Virus record (IMG/VR): IMGVR_UViG_3300042308_001511
Location: 248,001 to 312,000 of that record
Length of the DNA: 64,000 bases
Strand: one strand, 5' to 3'
Under the pieces are notes generated by a model. It saw nothing but the letters and a program-made list of their open reading frames with translations, ran no database searches and was not told the origin of the DNA. Of this stretch, positions 1,274-41,705 are shown piece by piece. The first letter of the stretch is position 1. The number at the start of each line of letters is the position of its first letter. The position numbers and the translations under genes were made by a program.

Positions 1274-2224
1274 TCAAAGAACCTCTCTAGCAATCCTGAC
1301 GAAACCATCAACACGACCCATTGTGTAGTAGTGTAAACAAGGTGCTCCTCTCTTTATTAGATCCTTCGATTGTTCTACACACCAACGTTCGCCAAGCGTT
1401 CGTATTGCGGTATCGTCTTTACACAATAAAGCTTCTTTGTGTAAAGCCTCAGGTATGTCAATCGAGAAAACACGTGGAATCATCGAAATCTGTGCCTTAC
1501 TTGCTAATGGTTTCAAACCCGGTATAATTGGAACCGTAATACCTGCTACACGACACTTAGCAACAAAGTCGAAGTATTTATCATTGTCATAGAATAGTTG
1601 TGTCACTACATAGTCAGCACCTGCATCCACCTTTGCTTTCAACCAATCAATGTCACTTGTTGGATTCACCGCCTCTGCGTGTTTTTCAGGATAACCAGCA
1701 ACACCCATACAGAAGTTAGTAGAAACCCCATTCAAATCTTCTTCAAGATAAACACCTTTGTTCAAATCAGATACTTGTCTAACTAAATCAATCGCATGAG
1801 AATGACCACCCGGCTCCGCTGAAAATACCTTTTCATTCTTAGTAGGGTCTCCTCTCAATACTAACATATTTTCAATACCTAAATAATGAAGATCCAAAAG
1901 TGCATCCTCGGTCTCCTCTTTGGTAAAACCACCACAGATAATGTGTGGTACCGTATCGACACCATATTTATGTGTGATTGAAGAACATATTCCGACCGTC
2001 CCAGGACGTTTTCGAATATGTACTTTCTCTAACAAACCATTGTCTCTCTTTTTATAGATGAACTCCGCTCTGTGATAGGTCACATTTATGAAAGGTGGCT
2101 TGAACTCCATAAGTGGATCAAGTATATCGTATAAATCTACGATGTTACTACCTTTCAATGGTGGTAGTATTTCGAAACTTGCAAATGGTTTTTTCGCTTT
2201 AGCTATGTGTTCTGTTACCTTCAT
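1274..2224 (-). CDS. metF: 5,10-methylenetetrahydrofolate reductase
   Basis: SFEILPP, VPHIICGG, LVLRGD, AGYPEKH, KVDAGADYVVTQLF, IPIIPG, LHYYTM motifs; Bacteroidota-type HRAEFIYK..RKRPGTVGIC insert. Confidence 0.95.
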   Translation of the reverse strand: MKVTEHIAKAKKPFASFEILPPLKGSNIVDLYDILDPLMEFKPPFINVTYHRAEFIYKKRDNGLLEKVHIRKRPGTVGICSSITHKYGVDTVPHIICGGFTKEETEDALLDLHYLGIENMLVLRGDPTKNEKVFSAEPGGHSHAIDLVRQVSDLNKGVYLEEDLNGVSTNFCMGVAGYPEKHAEAVNPTSDIDWLKAKVDAGADYVVTQLFYDNDKYFDFVAKCRVAGITVPIIPGLKPLASKAQISMIPRVFSIDIPEALHKEALLCKDDTAIRTLGERWCVEQSKDLIKRGAPCLHYYTMGRVDGFVRIAREVL

Positions 2225-26377: not shown

Positions 26378-26425
26378 ATGCGAAAACTACTAACAATCAT
26401 CCTAACAACACTTGCGTTATACTAA
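26378..26425 (+). pseudogene. Signal-peptide remnant MRKLLTIILTTLALY*
   Basis: LTIILTT identical to 25862; stop falls inside palindrome copy 1. Confidence 0.5.
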
Positions 26426-26710
26426 AAATACCACGTTTTTTAGTATGTTTTTTTCTGAACCGTGCAAGCACCTATAAATTGTTATTTCAAAAGCGGCTAT
26501 ACCGTAAATGCAGGTACATGCATCGGTCTCTAGGAGCCTTGCCCTTACTGGCTTTCAGAGGGTCTCATTTTTTTCACTGGTTTTCACTTTTTTTCCACAG
26601 GTTTTGAGCTTGTAGGCGTTGGTAAATAGTTACTAGGTCCCATACAAAAAAAACGTGGGATTTTTGGCACCTCAATTTTGGATATACTAAAAATCACGTG
26701 TTTTTTAGTG
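26419..26710. other. Candidate replication origin / skew-switch locus
   Basis: Non-coding, flanked by palindromes at 26419 and 26642/26684; hairpins 26508-26523 and 26542-26562; + strand changes from C/A-rich to G/T-rich here. Confidence 0.5.
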
Positions 26711-26750
26711 CTTTATTTTTTTGAATATATACTCTAAAATAAACTGAGTT

Positions 26751-27011
26751 ATGCAGATATTGAAGACATATGAGGGATTCCACGGGTATGGACCACAAAA
26801 GAAGAGGATATTGATTGAACAAAAGATGAAGTTTTTGCCTTTATTGGAGCAGCTACCAGATGAGGCAGATTTTTCTGTTGTTCATCAGAGTGATAAGTGG
26901 ACTGCGATTTCCTTTATCAAAATGGGTGGGAATCCGAGTGAGTTTTACTTAGATAAGGTTTTAGACATACTAAAGGAGAATGGCATTGACACCTCATCAA
27001 TCAGTGAGTGA
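26751..27011 (+). CDS. N-tag hypothetical protein
   Basis: MQILKTYEGF; GAATATATAC at 26723-26732. Confidence 0.6.
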   Translation: MQILKTYEGFHGYGPQKKRILIEQKMKFLPLLEQLPDEADFSVVHQSDKWTAISFIKMGGNPSEFYLDKVLDILKENGIDTSSISE

Positions 27012-27095
27012 TCATTTTTTTATAAGATACTAAAAATCACGTGTTTTTTTGTATATTTCAAATTTATATACAAAAAAACACGTGATTTTTAGCAT

Positions 27096-27791
27096 TTATT
27101 TGTTTTTGAAATATGTTAGGCCGAATGTGAATGTGTGTATTGTTTTCACTTTTTGTATTCCGTAGTAGTTATAGACATCTGCCGCAGTTATTGCTAAATT
27201 GGTTGCTATTCTATAGCTTATTTTAGTTGTTCCGTAAATAATAACATTTTCGCCACCATTTATAACGGGTTGATAATAATATTCGCTAGTAAATGTAAGT
27301 TTTTGTAGTTCTCTTACTATTTTTAGACGGAAAGAGTGTCTTATATATGATATGTCTTTGTTATTTATTCTTTGCCACAATAGGGCGTATGAGTAATTGA
27401 TTTTGAAACCTATAATTGTATCTCTTCTACCATATCCGATACCGATTAGGTTATCTAAATTCAGATCACGTGTTAGTGAGTAAGTTGTTTGTATTGTAGT
27501 AAATGCGCTATTATTTTTATTAGAGTATGGTATAATTAGTTTATTAGAAAATTCATTACTAATTAGTTTACTGGAGTATGAGATATCGTGATTTAGGTTG
27601 TTATTTATTGATATTTTGCCTAATTCGATATTTGTTGTGGAGTTTATACTCCCGTTGTAAGTTTTCTTAGAGTTATCGATATAATTGAATCCGAGTGTAT
27701 TATTGAGGTTATATTTCTGTGAAAAGATTATTATTGGTAGTAGTAATACCAATATTGTTATTTTGATTTTGTGTAATATACTAAAATTCAC
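27096..27791 (-). CDS. Outer-membrane beta-barrel protein (DUF481-like)
   Basis: Signal-like N-terminus, alternating beta strands, YYQP, ends TFTFGLTYFKNK; GTG start lies in palindrome copy 6. Confidence 0.6.
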   Translation of the reverse strand: MNFSILHKIKITILVLLLPIIIFSQKYNLNNTLGFNYIDNSKKTYNGSINSTTNIELGKISINNNLNHDISYSSKLISNEFSNKLIIPYSNKNNSAFTTIQTTYSLTRDLNLDNLIGIGYGRRDTIIGFKINYSYALLWQRINNKDISYIRHSFRLKIVRELQKLTFTSEYYYQPVINGGENVIIYGTTKISYRIATNLAITAADVYNYYGIQKVKTIHTFTFGLTYFKNK

Positions 27792-27805
27792 GTGATTTTT
27801 TGTAT

Positions 27806-28453
27806 TTAGAATGTTAGTTTTAGAGATTTGAGTATATGGTTATCATTAGATCCTCCTGTTGCAGCGCCTATACCTAAGTAGTAATTGTTATTATCGAAAG
27901 TAAAGTTTGTATATGAATGTTGCTCTGTAACGGGTTTTGTGTTACTGGTTGAGTAATATACCTTAGCGGTGCCGTTTGAGTGGTTGTAATCGAGCCAATA
28001 GTATGCATTTTGTCTAAATGAGATGGCTTGTGTTTCTGTGCCTTGGCTGGTATTATTTTTGTACCAGGTAACATTGTTATTGGTGAATGTAAGGAATGTT
28101 ATTGCGTTTATGGCGGATGTAATTCTGCCTACGCCACCGCCGGATACTCCGTTAGAGTTATTTGTTTGTGTCCATTGGATTGAGAATCCGTCGGCACCTG
28201 TTCCGTCGCTACATTCGAAGTTCCATTGTAGAGAGAAGTTTCGGTTGTATTTTATTTTGTTTGATCTGTATATGTTACCTACGTTTGCGTTGGTGTTATT
28301 TGTTATGTATATCCAGTTGTTGGATATTCCATAAGTAGATACGAGGTTTAGACCTTGCGTAGATATAAAGTTATCGTAGTTGAAACTGTCGTTTGTTTTA
28401 CTTTTCGGTAGTTTGGTTAGAGGTCCAGAGAAGGATGATACTTTATTGAGCAT
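27806..28453 (-). CDS. L-type (legume/ConA-like) lectin domain protein
   Basis: GADGFS, YWLDYN, YLGIGAATGG..DNHILKS; late motif 28474-28483. Confidence 0.75.
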   Translation of the reverse strand: MLNKVSSFSGPLTKLPKSKTNDSFNYDNFISTQGLNLVSTYGISNNWIYITNNTNANVGNIYRSNKIKYNRNFSLQWNFECSDGTGADGFSIQWTQTNNSNGVSGGGVGRITSAINAITFLTFTNNNVTWYKNNTSQGTETQAISFRQNAYYWLDYNHSNGTAKVYYSTSNTKPVTEQHSYTNFTFDNNNYYLGIGAATGGSNDNHILKSLKLTF

Positions 28454-28574
28454 TTTTATTTATATGGTTTCTATTATATATTATAATAGATTATACTAAA
28501 AAACACGTGAATTTTAGTATATTATTTTATAGAGGTGCCAAAGGGGATGTGATTTTTGGCACCTTTTGTATTGT

Positions 28575-28883
28575 TTAGATGTTATTGAAATTGGCAACGA
28601 CGTTATTTATGATTTTGTTTTTGATGTATTCTTTGCCTTGTTCGTCTGTGAATTTTTCAATTTCTGGGTTTGACATAGCATCTATGGTTGTTTGTAAGGC
28701 AGCGGTTGTCACTTCCATTACGGTCAGGTGGAATACTTTGGCGAAGTTATTTTTCAGGATCTCGCGGTTGGCTTCCATAGTTTCGGTTCCTTCGTCGAAT
28801 AGTTCTAAAAGGAATTCTACTTGTTCGTTTACTGGTTTAGCTTTGATTGTGTCGGCTTGTTCTTGTGTTAGGATAGTTTTCAT
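28575..28883 (-). CDS. Hypothetical protein
   Basis: TATATTTG at 28905-28912. Confidence 0.6.
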   Translation of the reverse strand: MKTILTQEQADTIKAKPVNEQVEFLLELFDEGTETMEANREILKNNFAKVFHLTVMEVTTAALQTTIDAMSNPEIEKFTDEQGKEYIKNKIINNVVANFNNI

Positions 28884-28924
28884 TGTTTAGGTTTTAGTTT
28901 TAGACAAATATACGTACGTAGTTC

Positions 28925-28984
28925 TTATAAAGAAAATAAGACTAATGTCACAATAACGATAACGATTACGATAATAATAGGCAT
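28925..28984 (-). CDS. 19-aa hydrophobic peptide MPIIIVIVIVIVTLVLFSL
   Basis: Short ORF with TATATTTG promoter at 29008-29015. Confidence 0.35.
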   Translation of the reverse strand: MPIIIVIVIVIVTLVLFSL

Positions 28985-29090
28985 GGCTTTATGTTTTTAG
29001 TGTTTCTCAAATATACTCATTCTTTGGGTACCAGGTACTAACAGGTGCTAAAAAAGACGTATTTTTTAGTATATTATTATTTTATAAGAT

Positions 29091-29215
29091 AGGTTGGAGT
29101 CTACCCTCTGCGTGCTGGTAGTGCACGAACCCTTTTCCCGGCTTTCCCAGTGAGTTAGTATGTGAAGTTATGGTCCCATCGTTTCTTTTGTTAAAGATAC
29201 GGAACTTTCCTGGAT
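29091..29215. ncRNA. Non-coding repeat copy 1 (structured RNA or DNA element)
   Basis: Four identical blocks (14, 22, 21, 11 nt) shared with 33328-33454; indels break frame. Confidence 0.55.
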
Positions 29216-29247
29216 GAATGGCTAAAAAAGACGTATTTTTTGGCATA

Positions 29248-30042
29248 TTATTTTGATTTGGGTCTGATAGAGATACCGAATAGTAGTTGTGTACTTTGTG
29301 TGTATACGCCGTATGCGAGTTTCTGGTTATCGATTTGTCCTATAGCATGCCTTAGATCTGTTCTGAAACTGATACGTTCTGAGATTGGTATTTTGATACC
29401 TATGTCTGCGAGTAGTCCCGCATCGACTCCAATGGTCTGCATTGGCTCTATATCGGATCGTATACCGTTGGTTGTGTTTGTATGATACTCTGATATAGGA
29501 AGAGAGAGAAAACCTCCCAGGTCGAGCGAGAGTGCCGTTTTGGTGCCATCTGTCTGTATTCCTATCATAAGTGGGATTGTGATATAGTTTAGCCTGGAGT
29601 ATCCTTCTGATACGACCCATGTTTTTGATTGGTATCCATAGTTTTCGGTTTGTGTCCAGAATTCGGAGTAGTAGGATCTTCCCTTGCTTTCTATGAAGAG
29701 TCCAGACTTCACGTTTATCCCTGGATTGACTGTACTTATCATTGCACCTGCGGAGTATCCCCAGATGTTGCCGAATTGTATTTGAAAGTCTGGTATGTTT
29801 CCGTAGAATTCTTCGTATCCGTTCTGGTCGTATCTGAACCAGTTTATGCTTGGTCCAATCTGTGGTGTTATTTCGACTGGGTACTTAGTACTTACTATGG
29901 TACCGAGAGCGGTTACAACACCTGCGGTTATGTAGCTGTTTACTGGATCCCAGGTTACTTTCTGTACTGGTGTATATGATTGTGCGATAAGTTTGGTGGA
30001 TAGCAGCACGATAAGTGCTAAAAAGTACGTGTTTTTTGGCAT
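29248..30042 (-). CDS. Outer-membrane beta-barrel, porin/PorT-like family
   Basis: Signal peptide; LNYITIPLMIG, DAGLLADIG, DLRHAIG, LLFGISI; ATG lies in palindrome copy 11. Confidence 0.7.
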   Translation of the reverse strand: MPKNTYFLALIVLLSTKLIAQSYTPVQKVTWDPVNSYITAGVVTALGTIVSTKYPVEITPQIGPSINWFRYDQNGYEEFYGNIPDFQIQFGNIWGYSAGAMISTVNPGINVKSGLFIESKGRSYYSEFWTQTENYGYQSKTWVVSEGYSRLNYITIPLMIGIQTDGTKTALSLDLGGFLSLPISEYHTNTTNGIRSDIEPMQTIGVDAGLLADIGIKIPISERISFRTDLRHAIGQIDNQKLAYGVYTQSTQLLFGISIRPKSK

Positions 30043-30044
30043 AT

Positions 30045-30812
30045 TTATTTTTCTAAGTTTTCTTTTACTCCAATTTGGTTCAGTCTATCAACACACATAT
30101 CATAATACATAGGATTGTTTTCAATTAGTATAAAATTCCTTTTTGTGTTTTTCGCGGCTAATCCTGTAGTCCCACAACCAGCACAATTATCTAAAATAAT
30201 ATTATCTTCATTACTATATGTTTTTATTAGATACTCACACAATTCTTGACTTTTTTGTGTTGGATGTATCGGTGGATGTGGTCTATCAAAACTTAAAATA
30301 CTTTTAGGATATTTTTTAGTATCACCCTTTCTATTTGCCGAAGGATTTTTATGACTATCAAATTTACCATAATTATTATTACCTAAATTACCATCTTTAT
30401 ATTTAGTACCCATACCATGTAAAGGTTCACCCTCAGTAAATTGTGGATTATATATTGGTAATTTTTTATAAAACACTATGATATCCTCATGGTTTCTTAA
30501 AGGCATTCTTTTAGCATTTAAAAATCCACTTCCCCTATTACCTTTATCCCAAATAAGATTATATCTATGTATTTTTTCATTAGATAACATCAACTTAGCA
30601 GTGAATTTATCCTGTCCAAATAAAATTATAGGTGAATTTTCTTTAGTTATCCTATTATATTGTTCCCAAAGTAATTCTAAATTTATGACTGAATCCCATT
30701 TGTTTTTGGTAACACCATAAGGTAAATCACATAATATCATATCAATATACTTATCAGGGATAGATTTCATTACTTCTAAACAATCCCCTAAATATGTTTT
30801 ATTTATTTCCAT
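30045..30812 (-). CDS. Beta-class DNA methyltransferase
   Basis: DMILCDLPYG, HPTQK, DNCAGCGTT. Confidence 0.9.
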   Translation of the reverse strand: MEINKTYLGDCLEVMKSIPDKYIDMILCDLPYGVTKNKWDSVINLELLWEQYNRITKENSPIILFGQDKFTAKLMLSNEKIHRYNLIWDKGNRGSGFLNAKRMPLRNHEDIIVFYKKLPIYNPQFTEGEPLHGMGTKYKDGNLGNNNYGKFDSHKNPSANRKGDTKKYPKSILSFDRPHPPIHPTQKSQELCEYLIKTYSNEDNIILDNCAGCGTTGLAAKNTKRNFILIENNPMYYDMCVDRLNQIGVKENLEK

Positions 30813-30830
30813 ATCCGTTTAATTTTGTTT

Positions 30831-31238
30831 TCATACGGTATTCCTTAGTACACCGTTTTTGTTTATTTTCCATTTATTCGAATGGTTTTTATGGTTCGTA
30901 TACATTATTGATTCTAAGCTTCTAAGGCCTTTGATACTCAGCATGTATTTTAGATCCGACTCTAAGCCATAACATTCGTCTTTATATGATATTCTTATCG
31001 TATCTGATAGGGTCCCGTTCATCTTATTGTAGAAATCATCATTGGATCTTATATCGATGTTTAAAACGTCTTCAGTGAAGTATATACTCCTTACAATGAA
31101 TGGTATCAGGGGCTCGTCGAATAGATAAAGGTTTGGAGGCCAATCGCGTTCGTTAGCAGGGATTCTGAGTTTCCCATTTATATCCAGATAGTTTAGAATC
31201 CTTTCAATCATTTCCAGCTTGATGTTCTTTGTCTTCAT
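30831..31238 (-). CDS. Hypothetical protein
   Basis: 135-aa ORF in operon. Confidence 0.55.
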   Translation of the reverse strand: MKTKNIKLEMIERILNYLDINGKLRIPANERDWPPNLYLFDEPLIPFIVRSIYFTEDVLNIDIRSNDDFYNKMNGTLSDTIRISYKDECYGLESDLKYMLSIKGLRSLESIMYTNHKNHSNKWKINKNGVLRNTV

Positions 31239-31242
31239 CTCA

Positions 31243-31509
31243 TTAATACTTAACCATTAAAAATGAGTGATCCCATTGATTGTAGTCTCCGCCTACAACA
31301 TCTTGAACTTGATATCCTTTCTTAATGTACTTATACATCTCGTCTGTGCCTCTTACATAAACTGTTGCTATGGGTTTAGCAGGAACTGAAAGTATAACTC
31401 CATTATCTACTCTAAATCGTTTGTCTTTTGACGCATCGGTTATTGTCATTGACATCATTACAAAAAATGCAAATCCTGCAATTAAGTATCCTAAGTTTTC
31501 TCTATTCAT
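31243..31509 (-). CDS. Membrane-anchored hypothetical protein
   Basis: Start at coupled ATG (MNRENLGYLIAGFAFFVMM). Confidence 0.6.
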   Translation of the reverse strand: MNRENLGYLIAGFAFFVMMSMTITDASKDKRFRVDNGVILSVPAKPIATVYVRGTDEMYKYIKKGYQVQDVVGGDYNQWDHSFLMVKY

Positions 31510-31757
31510 ATACCGATCTGGTTTAGGTTTGATTCTCTCAGCTTCTGTTTCAGTCTTTTCTCGTACTCCTCGATGGAGATTCGGAACTTGTTGCTCCATA
31601 CGAGTTCTCTGTACGGTGCCATTATGATGTCATCGTAGACGTATACGTTTTCGAAGATGATGTTTTTTCTGTTGACGGTCGGATCTGCCAGGCAGATAGC
31701 GTCTTTGATTATTTCGTGGTCGGGTTTCAAATCATTATTAATTTTGTATTTTTTCAT
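31506..31757 (-). CDS. C-tag hypothetical protein
   Basis: ends LRESNLNQIGI. Confidence 0.65.
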   Translation of the reverse strand: MKKYKINNDLKPDHEIIKDAICLADPTVNRKNIIFENVYVYDDIIMAPYRELVWSNKFRISIEEYEKRLKQKLRESNLNQIGI

Positions 31758-32031
31758 ATCTGTAAATATACGGAAAATAGTGAGAAGGTGCTAAACACCT
31801 CATCGTTTATTTAGACGATACATAACATAGACACTCAGACGCGACATATGTCTATGTACAACAAAGATTGATTGTTCTTCGATGGAGACATAGACATATG
31901 TCGAAAAGATTGATGTAAATCGACGCGTTCCTGTGATGCGTCTACTGTGCCGACGCTTTTTATTTTCACGGTTTCTGCACCAGTACCGGTATTTTTATTA
32001 TATTTGTAGAAACGAAGAAAAACGACGGACT

Positions 32032-32289
32032 ATGACAACTGATTTGAATAAGACCTTAGAGAAAGACGCAAACGGACGCTTGATCGACCTATACAACATC
32101 ATCCAGAACGAGGACATCACCAAAGCCGAAGGAGCCAACCTAAAGAGCTTATTCGAGACCGAGTTGAGAGTGATGCAGGAAGTGAGCGTACACCTACGCA
32201 GTGTACGTTTCGACCCATCGAGTGAAGAAGGAATGGAGCTGCAGCTTGGCCTTTGCCAAAAAGTGTTGAACGGCGAGTCATTGTCATAA
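32032..32289 (+). CDS. Hypothetical protein
   Basis: Start MTTDLNK behind TATATTTG at 31999-32006. Confidence 0.6.
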   Translation: MTTDLNKTLEKDANGRLIDLYNIIQNEDITKAEGANLKSLFETELRVMQEVSVHLRSVRFDPSSEEGMELQLGLCQKVLNGESLS

Positions 32290-32299
32290 ATCTACTAAA

Positions 32300-32818
32300 A
32301 TGAAATACTTCTCAGATTTCCAGACCGGAAAGACATACAACTACAAAACGCTCTCATTGGACGGCACCAAGACCGTTCGCGAGACTAACACCAAATACCT
32401 TTTCTCCTTCTACACAAGCAACGGAAACGAGATCGACCTTCACTTCTTCCCGAACGATAACTTCTCGGCACCTGAGGGATCCACGTTCGACGAGAAGAAA
32501 AAGAGGAAGTTGAACGACTCCAGGTGCAGGTACATACTGTGTGAGGTCGAGACAATAGTATACGACGTCGAAGGAAACGAGCACGGACGTGATACGAAGT
32601 TCGAGGTGTACGATAAGTCTACGGACAAGCAAACCTTCGCACGTGGAAAGAAAGCTCGTTACAACAAGGATTTCGCACCTTTCACGAGGTTCTTCAACAT
32701 CGAGCTGAAGGGCGGGAAGATGGTCTTGGCACCGGGCGGTGTCCACTACGGCGTGGTGCCAGGCACGTTGAAGCACGGAGTGGAGGTGAAGGCGGTTGAC
32801 TCATTAACAATAGTATAG
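32300..32818 (+). CDS. Hypothetical protein
   Basis: 172-aa ORF in island. Confidence 0.6.
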   Translation: MKYFSDFQTGKTYNYKTLSLDGTKTVRETNTKYLFSFYTSNGNEIDLHFFPNDNFSAPEGSTFDEKKKRKLNDSRCRYILCEVETIVYDVEGNEHGRDTKFEVYDKSTDKQTFARGKKARYNKDFAPFTRFFNIELKGGKMVLAPGGVHYGVVPGTLKHGVEVKAVDSLTIV

Positions 32819-32820
32819 AA

Positions 32821-33015
32821 ATGGACGGGTTGAGAATCATCGACAACAACACCGGGAACAAGTGGGTCATCAGATCAACGGGCAGAGGGCAGTTCCATCT
32901 GTCCAGGATCTATTCCAGCAAGAAGAACAAGAGAAGGCAGCAGTCGGAGCTGGTCTTCTCGGAATCTGAATGTCAAAAGTACATTAGTAATGGCAATTGG
33001 TCAAGCATCGTCTAA
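32821..33015 (+). CDS. Hypothetical protein
   Basis: 64-aa ORF in island. Confidence 0.5.
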   Translation: MDGLRIIDNNTGNKWVIRSTGRGQFHLSRIYSSKKNKRRQQSELVFSESECQKYISNGNWSSIV

Positions 33016-33058
33016 ATAGACGATAATACGTTTTATCGTTTATTTAGACGATTATCTT

Positions 33059-33256
33059 TCACGATATAGATATGTTTACGCACCATTTGACTCTGTGCTG
33101 CACGACACCGTTTTCGTTCAGGAAAGTCTCTCTGCGCAGGAAGCCATACAGATCCTTCTGGTCCACGATGACTCTTTCTCTGCCGTGCAGGCGCTGTAGC
33201 CTGAGAATCTCCTCATAGACCTCATCGATTGAGTTCGCTTCTATTTTTCGTGTCAT
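33059..33256 (-). CDS. Hypothetical protein
   Basis: Start MTRKIEA behind TATATTTG at 33272-33279. Confidence 0.5.
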   Translation of the reverse strand: MTRKIEANSIDEVYEEILRLQRLHGRERVIVDQKDLYGFLRRETFLNENGVVQHRVKWCVNISIS

Positions 33257-33327
33257 AGATATGTTTTTTGACAAATATAAGGAATATATTCTAATGAACA
33301 AAGGACGACTTTATTTTTTTATAAAGC

Positions 33328-33454
33328 AGGTTGGAGTCTACTCTTCCTGCACTGATGTTGTGCAACGCCCCTTTCCCGGCTTTCCCAGTGAGTCGATATG
33401 TCTTAGCTATGGTCCCATCGTTTCTTTTCATAAATATAAGGATCTTTCCTGGAT
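33328..33454. ncRNA. Non-coding repeat copy 2
   Basis: Homologous to 29091-29215; hairpin TGCAC-7nt-GTGCA corresponds to CGTGC-7nt-GCACG. Confidence 0.55.
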
Positions 33455-33515
33455 TAAACAAAGAAAGGTGCCAAAAATACACGTTTTTTGGCACCTTTCT
33501 ATAATCTGTATCAGA

Positions 33516-34805
33516 TTAGTTTTTTATGGCTTTCAGTGATATTGTTTGTCTGTCCTTTGTTATGTTCAGAAAATAAGTCCCTGGTTGCAGCATCTGTGTA
33601 TCGATTGAGATTGTGCCTCCGTCGAATACCTGGATTGTTTTCCCTTCGATGGTTGTAAATGTACCGTATGATCCAGGTGTCAAGCTAATCTCTATCCTAT
33701 CGTTGAAAGGGTTCGGCCAGAACAACTCTTTAAGTTGTTGTTCACGTAAAGATAAGCTAGATGAGTCTTTTAGTCCTGTATTGTCCCACAAACACTTCAC
33801 CGAGTCGAACTGGTAGACGTAGATAGTGTCTGTAGGCTGTACCGGTTTTGTGCCTTTGTTCTCCCATACGAGTGTTTTGATGTTGAACTGGTGGTTGTCC
33901 CAACAGGTTGTATCTGCAGGCCTGGTCGGTATTGCTCTTACAGAGTCCAGCCAGAAATATCCTGCGTACGGGTGGTACATCTGACATACGGGAGTATTAT
34001 CGTTACAATCAGATAGGAACTTACCAGATACTATAATACTATCGAGGTGAACGATTCCTGCGACCTGTGCTGCTGCGTAGTTACAGATCTTATACTGAGT
34101 GTTGTCGTAGCTGATATAGTAGCCTGAGCAGTCTGTAAAGCCGAGTGCTACGTAGTTGGTGATTGGTCCTGGTTCTGTACCTGGTACAATCATTATAGGA
34201 ACACCGGTTGGTTTGTATTCTTTGTTATTGGTTCCAACAACGGAACAACCGTTAGCGTCGGTGAATACGACGTATAGTTTAGGATTGTATAGGTTCATAA
34301 AGCAACCACCTTGGTTTGGACCGTAGTATTGGGTGAATGTGTTGTCCCAGTTCTTTGTGTATACTTTATCAATCATAGCATAGTTAGCTTTATCGACTGA
34401 AAAGTAAATACAGGTTTGTTGGTTTTGAGGGTTCTGTGGATCTGGCATCTGTATAACATTGAAGGAAGTGACCTTCAGTGAGTCACAGTCTTTAGTGACA
34501 GCGATAGAGATGTTTATTAGTGTGTCCAACGAGAATTTGGCTAAGCCGTCATCTTTCTTCTTACCGAGTACCCAGTAGGTGCCTGGTACGAGTTCGCCTT
34601 TTGTTTTAAAGTTTGTGGCCAGTTCGGATCCCTGTATTGCAGCGTCTACGACTCTATAGATTGACCACTTTTTAATGTTTGTTCCTGTGGTGTCGACTGA
34701 TACGGCACCATCATTGAAGTTTGGTCCAGTAGCGTTTGTGACCTTTACTTGTGAGTTTGCTAGGAATGCTAGCATAAATGAGATTGTAGCTATTAGTTTT
34801 TTCAT
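33516..34805 (-). CDS. Secreted protein with T9SS type A C-terminal sorting domain
   Basis: Signal peptide; C-term FWPNPFNDRIEI..TIEGKTI..IDTQMLQPGTYFLNI..LKAIKN. Confidence 0.8.
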   Translation of the reverse strand: MKKLIATISFMLAFLANSQVKVTNATGPNFNDGAVSVDTTGTNIKKWSIYRVVDAAIQGSELATNFKTKGELVPGTYWVLGKKKDDGLAKFSLDTLINISIAVTKDCDSLKVTSFNVIQMPDPQNPQNQQTCIYFSVDKANYAMIDKVYTKNWDNTFTQYYGPNQGGCFMNLYNPKLYVVFTDANGCSVVGTNNKEYKPTGVPIMIVPGTEPGPITNYVALGFTDCSGYYISYDNTQYKICNYAAAQVAGIVHLDSIIVSGKFLSDCNDNTPVCQMYHPYAGYFWLDSVRAIPTRPADTTCWDNHQFNIKTLVWENKGTKPVQPTDTIYVYQFDSVKCLWDNTGLKDSSSLSLREQQLKELFWPNPFNDRIEISLTPGSYGTFTTIEGKTIQVFDGGTISIDTQMLQPGTYFLNITKDRQTISLKAIKN

Positions 34806-34850
34806 ATTATTTTTTATACGAAAATAAATAAAAGATTTGATATGGTGTAA

Positions 34851-34882
34851 AAAAAAACCGTTCTGTTTTGAACGGGTTTTTT
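34851..34882. terminator. Intrinsic terminator
   Basis: AAAAAACCGTTC-TGTTTT-GAACGGGTTTTTT. Confidence 0.65.
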
Positions 34883-34895
34883 ATAATGTGAAAAA

Positions 34896-35201
34896 CTATG
34901 GTCTGTTTTGGTTCTGTTGTTGCTGAGGTTGTGGACAGATGACGTTCATAGTGGCGCCGTAGACCTTTAGGCCCAACGGAGTGTCCGCACCGTGAAGTTG
35001 GTGCCACTGACCCTCTGTTTTCATACCAGGGTTCACCGCCTCACCCTGTTGTTGTGCTCTGTACTGGTCACAAAGACCGTTAGGGCCATATACCAAACCC
35101 TTAATACCCTGTTGTTGCTGTTGTTGAGTCATATTCTGTGAGAATACAAATCCTGTAAACAAAAACGACACTATAAAGGCAATCACTTTACTTTTCTCCA
35201 T
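34896..35201 (-). CDS. Secreted Gln-rich protein
   Basis: MEKSKVIAFIVSFLFTGFVFSQ signal; polyQ tracts; two Cys. Confidence 0.6.
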   Translation of the reverse strand: MEKSKVIAFIVSFLFTGFVFSQNMTQQQQQQGIKGLVYGPNGLCDQYRAQQQGEAVNPGMKTEGQWHQLHGADTPLGLKVYGATMNVICPQPQQQQNQNRP

Positions 35202-35839
35202 CTTTTTATTATTTTTTTTATACGGCACCGAAACCAGCACCAGTTATATATTCCATTCCTAAAATCTCCCAAAAGGTACCAAAATCTCCACCAAACCCTC
35301 GGCCAGAACCTCCAATCATTCTTCCTATCCTCAACCAAACGCTCTGACCTCATAACGTTGGCCCACTCATCGTAGTCTAAATAAGCCAACTCTGCGTCAC
35401 CTATATCCCAAGACCCAGGTACCGACCAATCCTTTCCCATGTGACCTGAAAGTGCAAGAACACATACCTCCTCTAACAATGGTGAAACACCTATGTCTAA
35501 TCGCTTACTAGCCCTACGAAAACGTCCAACATGCCAAGCATTGACATCTATCAGTGCCACGTAGAACTCGTAATGTACAAACGAAGAGTCGGGTATGCCA
35601 TATCTACCCAGATCCAAAAGACGATCTTGTAACTGAAAGTAAGTAAGTTCGAACACAACACTACCATCACCAGAAAGACGATAACCCAAGTCCCTATCGA
35701 AACCTGTTTCCCAGTCATGCGTGAACCAGTCGTACATCGCCTGCACCGGATCTGAATACTCCTCTACCCAATAACCCTGTGTAGGACTAAGAACACCATT
35801 TACCTTCCTAAGTGGTAATAGAACCAATAACCAGCACAT
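35183..35839 (-). CDS. Hypothetical protein
   Basis: Start at coupled ATG (TGATG overlap); Trp/Arg-rich C-terminus. Confidence 0.55.
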   Translation of the reverse strand: MCWLLVLLPLRKVNGVLSPTQGYWVEEYSDPVQAMYDWFTHDWETGFDRDLGYRLSGDGSVVFELTYFQLQDRLLDLGRYGIPDSSFVHYEFYVALIDVNAWHVGRFRRASKRLDIGVSPLLEEVCVLALSGHMGKDWSVPGSWDIGDAELAYLDYDEWANVMRSERLVEDRKNDWRFWPRVWWRFWYLLGDFRNGIYNWCWFRCRIKKIIKRWRKVK

Positions 35840-36195
35840 CAATCGTAACAAATATGACCCTCCAAAGTACCAACACCGTAGACGTGTCCTTGTACGTAAA
35901 CCGTGTAGGTACCTGGTGGAATCTTAAATACACCATGTTCGAAAACTTGACTATAGTAATCACCAAACATAGTTATACCTGAAATCTTAACTCCAGTCGC
36001 CTGACCATCACCATACTTCATAAACCTGACAGATATCCGTCCAGTCTTAGTCGTGAACGTACCGTTAGTCTGAGTTATGTTGGGTGTCGATTGCCAAGAA
36101 GACCTACGTCCCTGTGTGAAAATTGAACTGCACATCTCACATGAGAAACACCAAACAGAAAATAACAAAAAAACCAATGAAACTAATATCCTCAT
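35839..36195 (-). CDS. Secreted hypothetical protein
   Basis: MRILVSLVFLLFSVWCFSC signal peptide. Confidence 0.55.
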   Translation of the reverse strand: MRILVSLVFLLFSVWCFSCEMCSSIFTQGRRSSWQSTPNITQTNGTFTTKTGRISVRFMKYGDGQATGVKISGITMFGDYYSQVFEHGVFKIPPGTYTVYVQGHVYGVGTLEGHICYD

Positions 36196-36205
36196 AATAT
36201 GATAT

Positions 36206-36574
36206 TTACTTACCCAGTATTTCTTTGTCAGTTGCTGACATAGATGTAACTACCATCGATAAGCCGGTGGCCATTACTGAGGCCCATTCAGGAAGTTTGA
36301 ATATGACACAGATTATGCCTAATATGATGTAAATTAATATACCTATCAGTATTCCTTTACCTAAACTTTTCCAGGTCGGTGGAACCTCATCTTCGTCTGC
36401 TACTGTAAGTGCCATTATGCCGGAACACACCGTTGCTATTGTTAGTAATAGATAGTATCCACCTGACCAGGTTCCACCGACCCACCAGTTTAGTAACAGG
36501 TAGTAAAGTGTACCTGTAGCGAGTGTGGTTCCGAGTGCTTTGATGATTCTTGAGATAATTAATGGTAAGTTCAT
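36206..36574 (-). CDS. 4-TM membrane protein
   Basis: Four hydrophobic segments. Confidence 0.6.
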   Translation of the reverse strand: MNLPLIISRIIKALGTTLATGTLYYLLLNWWVGGTWSGGYYLLLTIATVCSGIMALTVADEDEVPPTWKSLGKGILIGILIYIILGIICVIFKLPEWASVMATGLSMVVTSMSATDKEILGK

Positions 36575-36662
36575 AATAAAAAATATTTTTGTTTTTATAC
36601 AAAAATAAATAAAAGATTTGATATGGTGCTAAAAAATAATATATACAAAAAAGAAGATATTT

Positions 36663-37544
36663 ATGAAGTACATAAAGACTTACGAAGTGCTGAAGGAGGC
36701 CAAGCTTCCCAGAAGGAGGTTCATACTACTGTCAGGCCCCAGCGCCTCTGGTAAGTCAACACTGGCAAAGAACCTAGGTGCCACTCACTGGTACGATAAG
36801 ATGTCCCAGGCGGTACTGATTGGCACCGACGACTTTATGAATAGAAAGGCCTTCGGGGTTATGAAAAGTCTTTGTAAGGCTGCGGGAATGCCTTTACTGG
36901 CCGCTATGATGAAGGACTGGCCGCACGTATTCGACCAATACAAAAAAGACTTCACAAAGTGGCGCAAGACGGCATCAACCGAGGAGCAGTCAATCTTCGA
37001 CGACCTACATAAGAGGTTCCCTATCGATAAGGCGAAGGACAACGCTCCACACTTCCACCAAGACGGAAGGATCACAGGGATGGCCTGGTGTGCTGCACTT
37101 CTACCTAAGGAGTGTAAGACCATATTGTTCGACGACATATCTGTTGGTATAAAGAAGTACTTCGATGTTGATGAGTGGATCCTGTTCACACCATTTGACT
37201 GGTTGCTTAAGAACATAACCGACAGGAACTCAGATAAGGATAAGAGTGTTCATATAGACGTGAACTCGGAGGGTACCGCTATATACCAGTACTGCCAATG
37301 GTGGCAGGCGTCTGCTGAGGCGGATCTCGACAACAAGATGTACACGGCGGATTCTGTTAGGACGATGCTGTCTGCGGCAGGTCATAATGATCCAGATGAG
37401 GTTCTTTCGCTACTGGGTGTTAAGGGTCTTGATAACGGGTTCTATCTTACGACCAGGGACTGGATCGACGCGGGTTCGAGGATTGTGAACACCAGGGATG
37501 TTTCTACCGGTAGGGCCGGGGATTTGCCGGGTGGCTTAAAATAA
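36663..37544 (+). CDS. N-tag P-loop kinase
   Basis: MKYIKTYEVLKE; FILLSGPSASGKST; ILFDD; TAATATATAC at 36637-36646. Confidence 0.75.
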   Translation: MKYIKTYEVLKEAKLPRRRFILLSGPSASGKSTLAKNLGATHWYDKMSQAVLIGTDDFMNRKAFGVMKSLCKAAGMPLLAAMMKDWPHVFDQYKKDFTKWRKTASTEEQSIFDDLHKRFPIDKAKDNAPHFHQDGRITGMAWCAALLPKECKTILFDDISVGIKKYFDVDEWILFTPFDWLLKNITDRNSDKDKSVHIDVNSEGTAIYQYCQWWQASAEADLDNKMYTADSVRTMLSAAGHNDPDEVLSLLGVKGLDNGFYLTTRDWIDAGSRIVNTRDVSTGRAGDLPGGLK

Positions 37545-37561
37545 CATGGACTTTATGAAAC

Positions 37562-37767
37562 TTACATTCCCAATTCCTTAAGTTTATCTTCTCTGAGCTC
37601 TTCTACGGTTCTGAAGTTTTTCCGATCCAGATAAGACCATCTATCACTATCATTTTTGACTAAAATCAAATCCGGAGACATTCCATAGTCGTTTGCATCG
37701 TACCACTTGCCGACGTGACTGACAGGCGTTCTAATATTGATTGATTACTTACACAAATGACCTTCAT
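37562..37767 (-). pseudogene. Frameshifted C-tag small beta-barrel paralog
   Basis: MKVICVSNQ.. in frame 0; -1 frame ..HVGKWYDAND..LREDKLKELGM*. Confidence 0.6.
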
Positions 37768-37879
37768 ACTATTGTTATTCTCATAGGAACAAATATAGCG
37801 ATTAAAAAGAAAGGTGCCAAAAAATACGAGTTTTTTGGCAACTCATCATACTGGGTTCCGGTAAATAATATATACCCTT

Positions 37880-41203: not shown

Positions 41204-41430
41204 ATCCCTAGTTCTTTTAGTCTCCGTTCCCTTTGTATCGCCAGGTACTCCTTGATTGGGTAGGACCAGTAGCCGACTCCGTCGTAGAATATGCTGAATG
41301 TGTCGGTCCCCACGTCGCTTACGACGCCTTCTACACCCACGAAACGGTTCATACCTCTATTGTAGTTAAGGATTGCCGAGTTATTGAATGCGGGGAATTT
41401 GAATCCTTTCGCTATGTCTCCTATCTTCAT
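41200..41430 (-). CDS. C-tag KGFxF-family protein
   Basis: KIGDIAKGFKF..GVEG..WSYP; ends QRERRLKELGI. Confidence 0.7.
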   Translation of the reverse strand: MKIGDIAKGFKFPAFNNSAILNYNRGMNRFVGVEGVVSDVGTDTFSIFYDGVGYWSYPIKEYLAIQRERRLKELGI

Positions 41431-41705
41431 ATCCCAAGTTCTTTAAGTTTTTCTTCTCTCTGCAATACCAGGTATTCGTCCAGAGGATAGATCCAGTGCT
41501 GCATGTTTGGTTCTGCTGGCATTACGCGAAATGTATCTACGTGTATGGGTGTACCGATAAAGCCTATGACCAGCTCGTTCATTTTCGGCCTGACCTGCCT
41601 CGCGATACCTTCCACGCCCACGAACTGTTCCATTAGGTCGTTCCAGTGAACCCCACTCGAGTTTTCGAACCGGAATCCTTTTGCCTTGTCTCCACGCTTA
41701 ATCAT
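41427..41705 (-). CDS. C-tag KGFxF-family protein
   Basis: MIKRGDKAKGFRF..GVEG..WIYP; ends QREEKLKELGI. Confidence 0.7.
   Translation of the reverse strand: MIKRGDKAKGFRFENSSGVHWNDLMEQFVGVEGIARQVRPKMNELVIGFIGTPIHVDTFRVMPAEPNMQHWIYPLDEYLVLQREEKLKELGI

What the first reader, a model, noticed from the sequence alone, without database searches (positions are those of the whole stretch)
26419..37841. Thirteen 28-bp palindromes (arm-ACGT core-arm) punctuate gene boundaries: candidate recombination or origin-binding sites
Seen: e.g. ATACTAAAAA-TCACGTGT-TTTTTAGTG (26684), ATACTAAAAA-ACACGTGA-ATTTTAGTAT (28493), AGAAAGGTGCCAAAAA-TACACGT-TTTTTGGCACCTTTCT (33462). Two arm variants (ATACT/ATACA and GGTGCC/GGTGCT) occur in mixed combinations, which looks like recombinant hybrid sites. 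Copies separate single genes (26751, 27096, 27806, 28575, 29248), and 27027/27068 form an inverted pair. Established: ~10-13-bp inverted arms around a 6-8-bp spacer is the layout of tyrosine-recombinase sites (loxP, dif) and of dimeric operator sites. Inference: a dif-module/cassette-like array of envelope genes, or iterated binding sites for an origin protein. No recombinase is encoded in this window.
Basis: partly seen in the sequence, partly recalled or inferred. Interest (0 to 1): 0.8.

Follow-up and report, generated by a model that had tools for sequence, protein, structure and literature searches.

The report
Palindromic promoter-terminator cassettes shuffling phage genes
The 28-base palindromes are real. 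They belong to a family seen only in a group of giant freshwater Bacteroidota phages, where they sit between accessory genes, often fused to a host-type promoter, and mark where related phages have gained, lost or flipped gene cassettes. They look like a counterpart of the 'PeSL' cassettes of T4-like phages, not proven recombinase or origin sites.

Summary
Observation confirmed. There are 13 palindromes of about 28 bp (5-bp clamp, A5-6, a roughly 6-nt ACGT-type centre, T5-6, clamp) at 26.4-37.9 kb. A relaxed motif gives 12 hits against 1.15 expected. The window is bases 248,001-312,000 of a 344-kb IMG/VR phage contig. Strict versions of the motif occur nowhere else in that contig, and never more than once per stretch in any other viral contig or in 185,579 bacterial species genomes.

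Related metagenomic phages carry 83 distinct sites, 69 of them exactly 28 bp. About 50 have a Bacteroidota sigma-A -7 box (TAnnTTTG/A) at a fixed 16-19 or 28-29 nt. The canonical form reads as an A-flanked hairpin, a U-tract and a promoter.

Gene order differs between relatives. A 4.3-kb, six-gene block in the window is bracketed by two sites where a relative has one chimeric site. The outer-membrane gene has different neighbours in four relatives. The 6-nt centre is flipped between otherwise identical contigs.

Best reading: PeSL-like mobile regulatory cassettes that also serve as crossover points. Tyrosine-recombinase (dif-like) sites or operators for a dimeric regulator are not excluded. 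Origin iterons are unlikely.

A new covarying ~100-nt ncRNA gene rides in these cassettes.

The parts
26419..26446 (.). Palindrome s1 (ATACT clamps). It follows a truncated signal-peptide ORF and lies at the 3' edge of a decayed ncRNA copy.
26643..26670 (.). Palindrome s2, a degenerate hybrid (ATACA / GTGCC arms), at the 5' edge of the decayed ncRNA copy.
26684..26711 (.). Palindrome s3 (ATACT / GCACT arms, CACGTG centre), 39 nt upstream of the + strand gene 26751-27011.
27027..27054 (.). Palindrome s4, after the stop of + strand gene 26751-27011. It forms an inverted pair with s5.
27068..27095 (.). Palindrome s5, starting directly after the stop codon of minus-strand gene 27096-27791. Its reverse complement differs from s4 by one base.
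27778..27805 (.). Palindrome s6, between the lectin-like gene (27806-28453) and the 231-aa signal-peptide gene. The GTG in its centre is the only in-frame start for that gene.
28493..28520 (.). Palindrome s7 (perfect ATACT clamps), 40 nt upstream of the lectin-like gene's start.
28535..28562 (.). Hairpin s13 (GTGCC clamps, no ACGT core; extended stem 28531-28566). It follows the 102-aa gene 28575-28883. Fold energy is -14 to -18 kcal/mol.
29045..29072 (-). Palindrome s8, at the 3' side of ncRNA copy B. A -7 box TATATTTG (29008-29015) lies 29 nt downstream on the minus strand, ahead of a 19-aa hydrophobic ORF and the 102-aa gene.
29219..29246 (-). Palindrome s9, 1 nt after the stop of the outer-membrane gene. 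A -7 box TATCTTTA (29192-29199) lies 19 nt downstream and drives ncRNA copy B.
30015..30042 (-). Palindrome s10, 2 nt after the methylase stop codon. It is fused to the outer-membrane gene, coding MPKNTYFLA. Relatives keep the palindrome upstream of the native ATG.
33468..33494 (-). Palindrome s11 (extended 16-bp stem 33462-33500, about -18 kcal/mol), after the T9SS-tail gene. On the minus strand it is followed by a U-tract, a -33 TTTG and a -7 TATATTTA (33431-33438) that drive ncRNA copy C. It is the right boundary of the 4.3-kb cassette block.
37814..37841 (-). Palindrome s12. Its T-tract plus G supplies a -33 TTTG, and a -7 TATATTTG (37790-37797) lies 16 nt downstream on the minus strand. 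It is the left boundary of the 4.3-kb cassette block.
33501..37813 (.). Cassette block of six genes (T9SS-tail protein, four small secreted or membrane ORFs, P-loop ATPase). It is present here and absent from relative L036, which has a single chimeric palindrome at the junction.
29059..29196 (-). ncRNA gene copy B (covariance-model hit, 141 bits).
33296..33435 (-). ncRNA gene copy C (covariance-model hit, 148 bits).
31786..31800 (.). Collapsed remnant (GGTGCTAAACACC) at the position where relative L036 has a full 28-bp palindrome.

Best explanation
The palindromes are copies of a phage-family-specific mobile regulatory cassette.

Anatomy. The core is a 28-bp hairpin-forming unit: a clamp, A6, a ~6-nt centre, T6, and the complementary clamp. 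In its canonical form it is flanked by A's upstream and a U-rich tract downstream, which is the layout of a bidirectional intrinsic terminator. It is fused at a fixed distance to a Bacteroidota sigma-A promoter. The -33 TTG/TTTG comes either from the T-tract plus the first G of the clamp, or from the U-tract. The -7 box is TAnnTTTG.

Regulatory role. Each accessory gene, or the small ncRNA gene, in this hyperplastic region is therefore bracketed by such units. They end or insulate the upstream transcript and start the next one.

Recombination role. The units are the only sequence shared between otherwise unrelated cassettes. The phage's or host's general recombination and template-switching machinery therefore crosses over inside them. 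This inserts, deletes, inverts and reshuffles cassettes, and leaves hybrid arms, doubled sites and flipped centres behind.

Shown versus inferred. Shown here: the anatomy, the fixed promoter spacing, the position after gene ends, the confinement to one region and one phage group, the cassette indel with a chimeric junction, the variable gene order, and the spacer flips. Inferred: that the hairpin terminates transcription, that the promoters fire, and that exchange is homology-driven rather than enzyme-directed.

The AT-clamped copies at 26.4-28.5 kb have weak hairpins and no recognisable promoter. They are probably a young local subfamily that now acts mainly as cassette junctions or weak attenuators.
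For: Family and architecture. A census of 63 related loci (392 kb) found 83 distinct sites, 69 of them exactly 28 bp. A -7 box falls in sharp peaks at 16-19 and 28-29 nt downstream. The -7 box consensus and its position at -12 to -5 are taken from PMC9723704.

Position. Of 49 promoter-oriented sites, 31 have a co-directional gene or ncRNA end just upstream. Their median fold energy is -12.6 kcal/mol, with 55% U in the 12-nt tail and 56% A in the 8-nt head. Of the 83 sites, 74 are not deep inside any ORF of at least 70 aa, and 41 lie within 80 nt of a gene's 3' end. A generic terminator scan flags s11, s12 and s13.

Shuffling. Three-way alignment A3 shows that L036 has one site whose left flank and centre match s12 and whose right flank matches s11. 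Homology-block ends cluster at palindromes: 6 of 37 against 5% expected, p about 0.01, and these are the most recurrent ends. The outer-membrane gene has different neighbours in the window, L036, L041 and L042.

Flipped centres. L036 and L037 differ at only 4 positions in 1517 nt, and all four lie in the 6-nt centre. The same kind of flip is seen in L079 against L085/L103 and in s11 against L106.

Confinement. Strict motifs occur in the 344-kb contig only in this region.

Precedent. PeSLs are defined as an early promoter plus a stem-loop terminator flanking ORFans in hyperplastic regions, where two PeSLs around a cassette in one phage correspond to a single PeSL in its relative, with crossovers inside the loop (PMC2839356, PMC4122927).
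Against: Only 4 of the 13 window sites (s8, s9, s11, s12) have a recognisable sigma-A promoter.

The ATACT-type hairpins are weak, at -2 to -9 kcal/mol.

In the sense of the downstream promoter, the hairpin is weaker than its antisense version in 23 of 36 distinct sites and stronger in only 9.

Clamp complementarity within a site barely exceeds that of random left-right pairings: 26% against 13.5% perfect. Pairing is therefore not strongly maintained, while the 28-bp length is. That pattern fits protein recognition better than a terminator.

In relative L076, two back-to-back palindromes sit between divergent promoters, where neither would be transcribed. The element therefore travels with the promoter and cannot be only a terminator.

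Three window sites lie inside coding sequence.

There are no expression data of any kind.
Confidence: 0.5

Rival explanations
1. The 28-mers are core sites of a site-specific (tyrosine-type) recombinase. The layout would be 11-bp arm, 6-bp spacer, 11-bp arm, as in dif or pdif. The enzyme would be encoded elsewhere in the 344-kb genome or supplied by the host. Cassettes would be moved as in pdif modules or integrons.
For: The 11-6-11 geometry is kept at exactly 28 bp in 69 of 83 sites despite slippage-prone A/T runs.

Arms recombine as units, giving hybrid sites.

The cassette indel has a chimeric site at its junction.

Cassettes occur in both orientations, and there is an inverted doublet.

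A mild conserved left/right asymmetry (ATGCY...AGCAC) is seen relative to the downstream unit.
Against: No integrase or recombinase is found among 87 window ORFs, nor among the annotated genes of the related loci fetched with Pfam calls.

Both arms share one consensus.

No multi-copy or similarly clamped site appears in 185,579 species genomes.

A flip of a 6-bp centre cannot be made by such an enzyme acting on one site.

The fixed-distance promoter and the U-tract are unexplained by this model.
Confidence: 0.17
2. The palindromes are operators for a dimeric DNA-binding regulator from the phage or the host. The regulator would switch a set of host-RNAP promoters of accessory cassettes on or off. 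Recombination at the sites would be a by-product.
For: The site centre lies at about -42 to -46 (spacing 16-19) or about -55 (spacing 28-29) relative to the start site. It overlaps or abuts the -33 element, which is weak or missing in the ncRNA promoters that carry a palindrome.

In L076, two sites serve divergent promoters and would not be transcribed.

Length and half-site consensus are conserved more strongly than pairing is.

The centre is semi-conserved as NACGYN.
Against: Clamps differ between lineages (GCGCT, GTGCC, GTACT) and are mixed within this one genome.

Centres can be replaced by unrelated 7-9-nt loops (L083, L052), and they flip freely.

A third of the family, and 9 of the 13 window sites, have no promoter nearby.

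No candidate regulator has been identified.
Confidence: 0.2
3. The sites are iterated binding sites of a replication-origin protein (iterons).
For: The sites are AT-rich, repeated and clustered. The cumulative GC skew has a local minimum near 24-26 kb.
Against: The sites are spread over 11 kb, one per gene boundary, rather than packed next to an unwinding element.

In relatives they occur in many different genomic contexts and travel with cassettes.

The skew turn coincides with a switch in gene strand.

No replication-initiator gene is adjacent.
Confidence: 0.02
4. The repeats are only shared 5' coding segments (MPKNT.FLA signal-peptide starts) of paralogous genes, and are palindromic by accident.
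For: Three minus-strand ORFs start with the palindrome.
Against: In relatives at 82-93% identity the same outer-membrane protein starts MNKITII..., and the palindrome lies upstream of the ATG.

The two small ORFs are not conserved as proteins. Their conserved block is read in two different frames, and one relative has an early stop.

Most sites are non-coding.
Confidence: 0.02

Closest known systems
PeSLs (promoter-early stem-loops) of T4-like myoviruses (Arbiol et al. 2010, PMC2839356; Comeau et al. 2014, PMC4122927)
   Same: Both are short conserved composite units, a stem-loop plus a host-type promoter, concentrated in hyperplastic regions of large phage genomes. Both flank single accessory or orphan genes. 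In both, the stem is built on complementary homopolymer tracts (G/C there, A/T here). In both, a cassette bracketed by two units in one phage corresponds to a single chimeric unit in a relative, with crossovers in or near the loop.
   Different: The phage lineage and host phylum are unrelated. The promoter is of the Bacteroidota sigma-A type (-33 TTG, -7 TAnnTTTG), not sigma-70. The core is a strict 28-bp palindrome with an ACGT-type centre. Many copies lack a promoter. Terminator and promoter activity and mini-circles have been demonstrated for PeSLs but not tested here.
   Same: The length is 28 bp, with an 11-6-11 layout and A/T-rich inner arms. The sites bracket small gene modules that turn up in different contexts.
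   Different: The arms are not differentiated into XerC and XerD halves. No similar chromosomal dif site was found. No Xer-type gene is in the window. The sites are tied to promoters and U-tracts.
Integron attC sites
   Same: One imperfect palindrome per cassette, hybrid sites after exchange, and structure apparently mattering more than sequence.
   Different: attC sites are 57-141 bp with extrahelical bases, lie next to an intI gene and attI, and their cassettes are promoterless and co-oriented. None of this holds here.
REP / REPIN elements and chloroplast hairpin-loop flips
   Same: Both are extragenic palindromes after genes, with occasional inverted doublets. Small inversions of the loop between stem arms are seen, as in chloroplast intergenic hairpins.
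   Different: REPs are chromosome-wide and linked to a RAYT transposase. The sites here are confined to one region of a phage genome and to one phage group.

Membership tests
PeSL-like mobile regulatory cassette | Repeated motif concentrated in a hyperplastic region, flanking single accessory or orphan genes | tested here: met
   Thirteen sites lie in 11 kb and there are none in the other 53 kb. Strict motifs are absent from the rest of the 344-kb contig. Most flanked genes have no family hit.
PeSL-like mobile regulatory cassette | Composite of a stem-loop and a host-type early promoter | tested here: inconclusive
   Met for about 49-55 of 83 family sites, with fixed spacing to a TAnnTTTG/A box, and for 4 of the 13 window sites. 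Not met for the ATACT-type copies.
PeSL-like mobile regulatory cassette | The stem-loop terminates transcription and the promoter is active | not testable with these tools
   Only sequence criteria are available: the U-tail, A-head and fold energy. Sense hairpins are not the stronger ones.
PeSL-like mobile regulatory cassette | Two units around a cassette in one phage correspond to one chimeric unit in a relative | tested here: met
   Alignment A3 of s12, the L036 junction and s11; block map.
PeSL-like mobile regulatory cassette | Excised cassette mini-circles | not testable with these tools
   This needs reads or inverse PCR.
PeSL-like mobile regulatory cassette | T4-like phage with a sigma-70 consensus promoter (family in the strict sense) | tested here: not met
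   There is no near match in the phage collection. The promoter type is Bacteroidota sigma-A. The relation is therefore analogy, not membership.
dif / pdif (Xer) sites | 28 bp: 11-bp arm, 6-bp spacer, 11-bp arm | tested here: met
   69 of 83 sites are exactly 28 bp.
dif / pdif (Xer) sites | Two different arms, for two recombinases, or resemblance to the host dif site | tested here: not met
   Both arms follow one consensus, R-Y-G-C-Y-A6. The strict motif gives only unrelated singletons in 185,579 species genomes. The host itself may be missing from that set.
dif / pdif (Xer) sites | A cognate tyrosine recombinase | tested here: inconclusive
   None is found in the 64-kb window. The other 280 kb of the contig and the host could not be examined.
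Integron attC | Adjacent intI and attI, attC of 57-141 bp, promoterless co-oriented cassettes | tested here: not met
   There is no integrase. The sites are 28 bp. Cassettes lie on both strands and have their own promoters.
Intrinsic (bidirectional) terminator | A stable stem followed by a U-tract, with an A-tract before it for the opposite direction | tested here: inconclusive
   Met by canonical GC-clamped copies and by s11, s12 and s13. Not met by AT-clamped copies, at -2 to -9 kcal/mol.
REP / REPIN | Genome-wide extragenic spread and a RAYT gene | tested here: not met
   The sites form a local cluster only. No Y1 transposase is present. No bacterial genome has several copies.
Origin iterons | Tightly packed direct repeats next to an initiator gene and an unwinding element | tested here: not met
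   There is one site per gene boundary over 11 kb, and the sites travel with cassettes in relatives.

The most novel reading that the evidence does not exclude
The 28-mers are the core sites of a dif-like (11-6-11) site-specific cassette-exchange system in giant Bacteroidota phages. The recombinase would be an unidentified phage or host enzyme. The sites would have been co-opted as promoter and terminator parts. This would be a phage counterpart of pdif modules or integrons, moving secreted-protein genes and a small ncRNA between genomes.
Probability: 0.15. Interest if true: 0.85.

Novelty: new variant of a known kind. Interest (0 to 1): 0.55.

Why it matters
PeSL-type 'mobile regulatory cassettes' have so far been described in T4-like phages of Proteobacteria, going by the two PeSL papers read here. 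I made no systematic search for other reports.

Finding the same logic, built from different parts, in 300-kb-class freshwater Bacteroidota phages suggests it is a general and convergent solution. In that solution, large phages keep a plastic accessory-gene compartment that stays expressed wherever a cassette lands.

The cassettes here carry envelope-related cargo: an outer-membrane beta-barrel, a T9SS-sorted protein, a lectin-like protein, DNA methylases, and a previously undescribed structured ncRNA. The sites are therefore handles for studying host-surface remodelling and gene flow in uncultured phages. The canonical unit could also serve as a compact terminator-promoter part for Bacteroidota genetics.

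The strict 28-bp geometry, the weakly maintained pairing and the flipping centres are not fully explained by the terminator model. They leave room for an undiscovered protein partner.

Tried and rejected
**Near-identity search.** A search of the region against 50,697 phage records gave only a 91-bp methylase hit.

**Rfam.** Neither the gathering nor the E-value threshold gave any real family. The only hits were spurious miRNA matches to the s4/s5 doublet.

**tRNAs.** None were found.

**Looser viral scan.** It therefore says nothing about the rest of the genome.

**Host REP or dif hypothesis.** The strict motif gave 62 singletons in 185,579 species genomes. None had the R-Y-G-C-Y clamps.

**Small-protein hypothesis for ORFs 29082-29246 and 33291-33494.** Rejected. 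The conserved block is read in two frames across copies, the ATG is not conserved, and one relative has an early stop.

**Restriction or methylation-site hypothesis for the ACGT centre.** ACGT and CACGTG are not avoided in the window.

**Strand test for an RNA hairpin.** Transition mismatches show no G-U bias overall. There is a mild bias against the sense strand. The test therefore did not support an optimised sense terminator.

**Sigma-70-type promoter scan.** No enrichment: 58 found against 52.6 expected.

**Bacteroidota-type full promoter pattern.** Only a modest excess in the window: 14 found against 6.5 expected.

Full report
**Observation**

Reading the region shows thirteen units of one design. 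Each has a 5-bp clamp of the form R-T-R-C-Y, a run of five or six A, a centre of about six bases that usually contains ACGT, five or six T, and the complementary clamp. Twelve are 28 bp long and one is 27 bp.

A relaxed motif, A5-NN-ACGT-NN-T5 with up to 2 mismatches, occurs 12 times in the 64-kb window. Shuffles give 1.15 expected and a maximum of 4. All hits but one fall between 26.4 and 37.9 kb. Half-sites of the R-T-R-C-N-A4+ type are also concentrated there.

The 27027/27068 pair is a true inverted doublet, with 30-nt arms that are 97% complementary. Hybrid arm combinations (ATACT, ATACA, GTGCT, GTGCC, ATGCC) are real. The sites lie at gene boundaries, in several cases 0-2 nt after the upstream stop codon.

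**Context**

The window is bases 248,001-312,000 of IMGVR_UViG_3300042308_001511, a 344,083-bp viral contig. It has 38.6% G+C and no tRNA genes. Few of its ORFs match any family.

The matches that exist point to a Bacteroidota host. They are a T9SS C-terminal sorting domain, an OMP_b-brl_2 outer-membrane barrel, a legume-lectin-like protein, two N6/N4 DNA methylases, MTHFR, RNase H and LRR proteins. No integrase, transposase or recombinase family is found among 87 ORFs of at least 100 aa.

**Distribution**

Two strict forms of the motif were scanned through all of IMG/VR. Each finds several copies only in this stretch of this contig, and single chance hits elsewhere. The family is therefore not a genome-wide terminator of this phage.

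The same strict form gives only 62 singletons in one genome each of 185,579 bacterial and archaeal species. None has the characteristic clamps. It is thus not a host REP-like family, and no dif-like counterpart was seen.

**Relatives**

The 264-aa outer-membrane protein has homologues at 44-98% identity in lake metagenomes. Their contigs, and those recovered with an 18-mer from a repeated element, give 63 related loci totalling 392 kb.

In them I count 83 distinct palindromes of the same design, and 69 are exactly 28 bp. Clamps differ by lineage: GCGCT, GTGCC, GTGCT, ATGCY, ATACT and GTACT. Centres are mostly NACGYN, but some are unrelated 7-9-mers.

The key finding is a Bacteroidota sigma-A -7 box. 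Its consensus is TAnnTTTG and it lies at -12 to -5 (PMC9723704). It sits at a sharply fixed distance from the palindrome in about 49-55 of the 83 sites, either 16-19 nt or 28-29 nt downstream.

The canonical unit, in the direction of the downstream gene, reads:
- an A-rich head;
- clamp-A6-centre-T6-clamp;
- a U-rich tract (TTTTCTTGTTTT or CTTTCTTTGTTT) that contains the -33 TTG;
- about 20 nt of spacer;
- TATTTTTG;
- about 25 nt, then the ATG.

In the short-spacing class, the T-tract plus the first G of the clamp is itself the -33 TTTG.

Of 49 promoter-oriented sites, 31 have a co-directional gene or ncRNA end just upstream. Their median fold energy is -12.6 kcal/mol. Of all 83 sites, 74 are not deep inside any ORF of at least 70 aa.

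In the window, s8, s9, s11 and s12 have this composite form. A generic terminator scan flags s11, s12 and s13.

**Shuffling**

Nucleotide comparison of the window with the relatives gives a mosaic of blocks.

Locus L036 is colinear with window 39.7-37.8 kb. It then continues directly with window 33.5-33.07 kb. At the junction L036 has one palindrome. Its left flank and centre are those of s12, and its right flank is that of s11 (alignment A3). The 4.3 kb between s11 and s12, holding six genes, is therefore a block bracketed by two units where the relative has one. This is exactly the pattern described for PeSLs (PMC2839356).

The outer-membrane gene has four different neighbourhoods:
- window: a methylase upstream and an ncRNA downstream;
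- L036: a 128-aa ORF upstream and a 91-aa ORF downstream;
- L041: a SPOR-like gene on the opposite strand;
- L042: a lipoprotein upstream.

In L041 the T9SS gene and the homologue of 32300-32818 are adjacent and co-oriented. In the window they are separated and on opposite strands.

Distinct block ends fall within 12 nt of a palindrome 6 times out of 37, against 5% expected (p about 0.01). These are the ends shared by most relatives. This enrichment is partly confounded with gene boundaries.

In L042 and L130 the palindrome lies immediately upstream of the native start of the outer-membrane gene (MNKITII...). In the window and in L041, an ATA-to-ATG change plus a deletion fused it to the ORF (MPKNTYFLA...). 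The palindrome therefore overlies coding sequence only secondarily.

**DNA-level dynamics**

L036 and L037 differ at four positions in 1517 nt, and all four lie in the 6-nt centre. It reads CTCGTA in one and TACGAG in the other. The same kind of flip separates L079 from L085/L103 and s11 from L106. At 31786-31800 the window has a collapsed remnant where L036 has a full site.

Such flips and centre deletions are what hairpin or cruciform intermediates and arm-to-arm exchange produce. A recombinase acting on a single site cannot make them.

**What does not fit a plain terminator**

- The ATACT-clamped copies fold weakly, at -2 to -9 kcal/mol, and have no recognisable promoter.
- Across the family, left and right clamps are only slightly more complementary than random pairings: 26% against 13.5% perfect. 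Mismatches are transitions with no G-U bias.
- In the sense of the downstream promoter, the hairpin is the weaker of the two strands in 23 of 36 sites.
- The 28-bp length is kept despite slippage-prone runs.
- In L076 two palindromes sit back to back between divergent promoters, where they would not be transcribed.

These points give real weight to a protein partner, either a regulator or a recombinase. The element clearly travels with the promoter as well as with gene ends.

**Verdict**

The best-supported reading (confidence 0.5) is a PeSL-like mobile regulatory cassette. It is a palindromic hairpin coupled to a host-type promoter. It punctuates transcription in a hyperplastic region, and as the only shared sequence between unrelated cassettes it is where recombination reshuffles them.

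The rivals are:
- operator sites of a dimeric regulator (0.2);
- dif-like recombinase sites (0.17);
- origin iterons (0.02);
- shared coding 5' ends (0.02).

The tyrosine-recombinase and origin mechanisms are not. Activity of the terminators and promoters, and the enzyme basis of exchange, remain untested.

**Side finding**

Many cassettes carry a ~100-nt non-coding RNA gene. It has its own -33/-7 promoter, an invariant purine-rich block, and a 5-bp stem with a 7-nt loop. All five pairs of that stem covary and none is ever broken in 28 copies. There is also a second 7-bp stem with covariation.

It is not protein-coding. The conserved block is read in two frames across copies, and the ATG is not conserved. 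It matches no Rfam family. The window has two intact copies and one decayed copy.

Noticed in passing
window 29059-29196 (-) and 33296-33435 (-); decayed copy about 26450-26680 (-); 28 further copies in L036-L130: A new candidate structured ncRNA family of about 100 nt. It has a Bacteroidota-type promoter and an invariant block containing GGGAAAGCCGGGAAA. Hairpin 1 has 5 of 5 covarying pairs, a 7-nt loop and variable loop positions 3-5. Hairpin 2 also shows covariation. There is no Rfam match. Some relatives (L041, L117, L130) carry a canonical terminator hairpin inserted at its 3' end, which fixes the transcribed strand. Function is unknown.
   Followed up: yes
window 31802-31819, 33007-33024, 33035-33052: A second hairpin family (ATCGTYTAWWTAGACGAT). 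The copies bracket a ~1.2-kb block of three + strand genes (31933-33015) that relative L036 lacks. They also occur after the ncRNA in L061. This appears to be another cassette-junction element.
   Followed up: partly
L036:1305-1332 versus L037:1305-1332; L079:4564 versus L085:3516 and L103:2172: The 6-7-nt centre of the palindrome is inverted between contigs that are otherwise identical. This is a natural flip polymorphism of the hairpin loop.
   Followed up: yes
window 14023-58545 (18 copies, family D1), e.g. 37562-37596, 41427-41461: A 35-nt repeat that encodes a conserved C-terminus (...EE.R..KLKELG[ILM] then stop) of a large paralogous family of small proteins, mostly on the minus strand. 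A matching N-terminal motif (M.[YIL][IL]K[TL][YF]E.F) recurs in several + strand genes (26751, 36663, 37880, 44704, 51307).
   Followed up: no
window 34823-34850 and 36597-36627: A ~30-nt repeat lies upstream of two minus-strand genes (ATG at 34805 and at 36574). It ends in the half-site GGTG(C)TAAAAAA and carries a TAnnTTTG-like box on the minus strand. This looks like a palindrome half-site joined to a promoter.
   Followed up: partly
L079, L085, L103, L106:7171-7250 (relatives): ncRNA promoters that lack the 28-bp palindrome instead have a small inverted repeat (CTCACA..TGTGAG type) overlapping the -33 TTTG. This may be a different operator.
   Followed up: no
window 29082-29246 (-) and 33291-33494 (-): ORFs of 54 and 67 aa start at the palindrome's ATG or GTG and run through the promoter and the whole ncRNA. 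They are open in several relatives but in different frames. They are probably non-functional. Re-initiation after the adjacent stop codon (TAATATG) is not excluded.
   Followed up: partly
window 1-64000: The palindromic tetranucleotides CATG (83 found, 217 expected), TTAA (223 found, 525 expected), CTAG (83 found, 187 expected) and GCGC (18 found, 39 expected) are strongly depleted. ACGT is not. This looks like restriction avoidance.
   Followed up: no
window 1274-2224 (-) for MTHFR; other ORFs not pinned down: The auxiliary genes are unusual for a phage: MTHFR, a LOG-like 'lysine decarboxylase' family protein together with an isopentenyl-transferase hit, HAD 'Swiss-army-knife' RNA-repair domains, and peptidases of families S51 and C39.
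   Followed up: no
window 28928-28987 (-): A 19-aa, entirely hydrophobic ORF (MPIIIVIVIVIVTLVLFSL) lies between the s8-linked promoter and the 102-aa gene.
   Followed up: no
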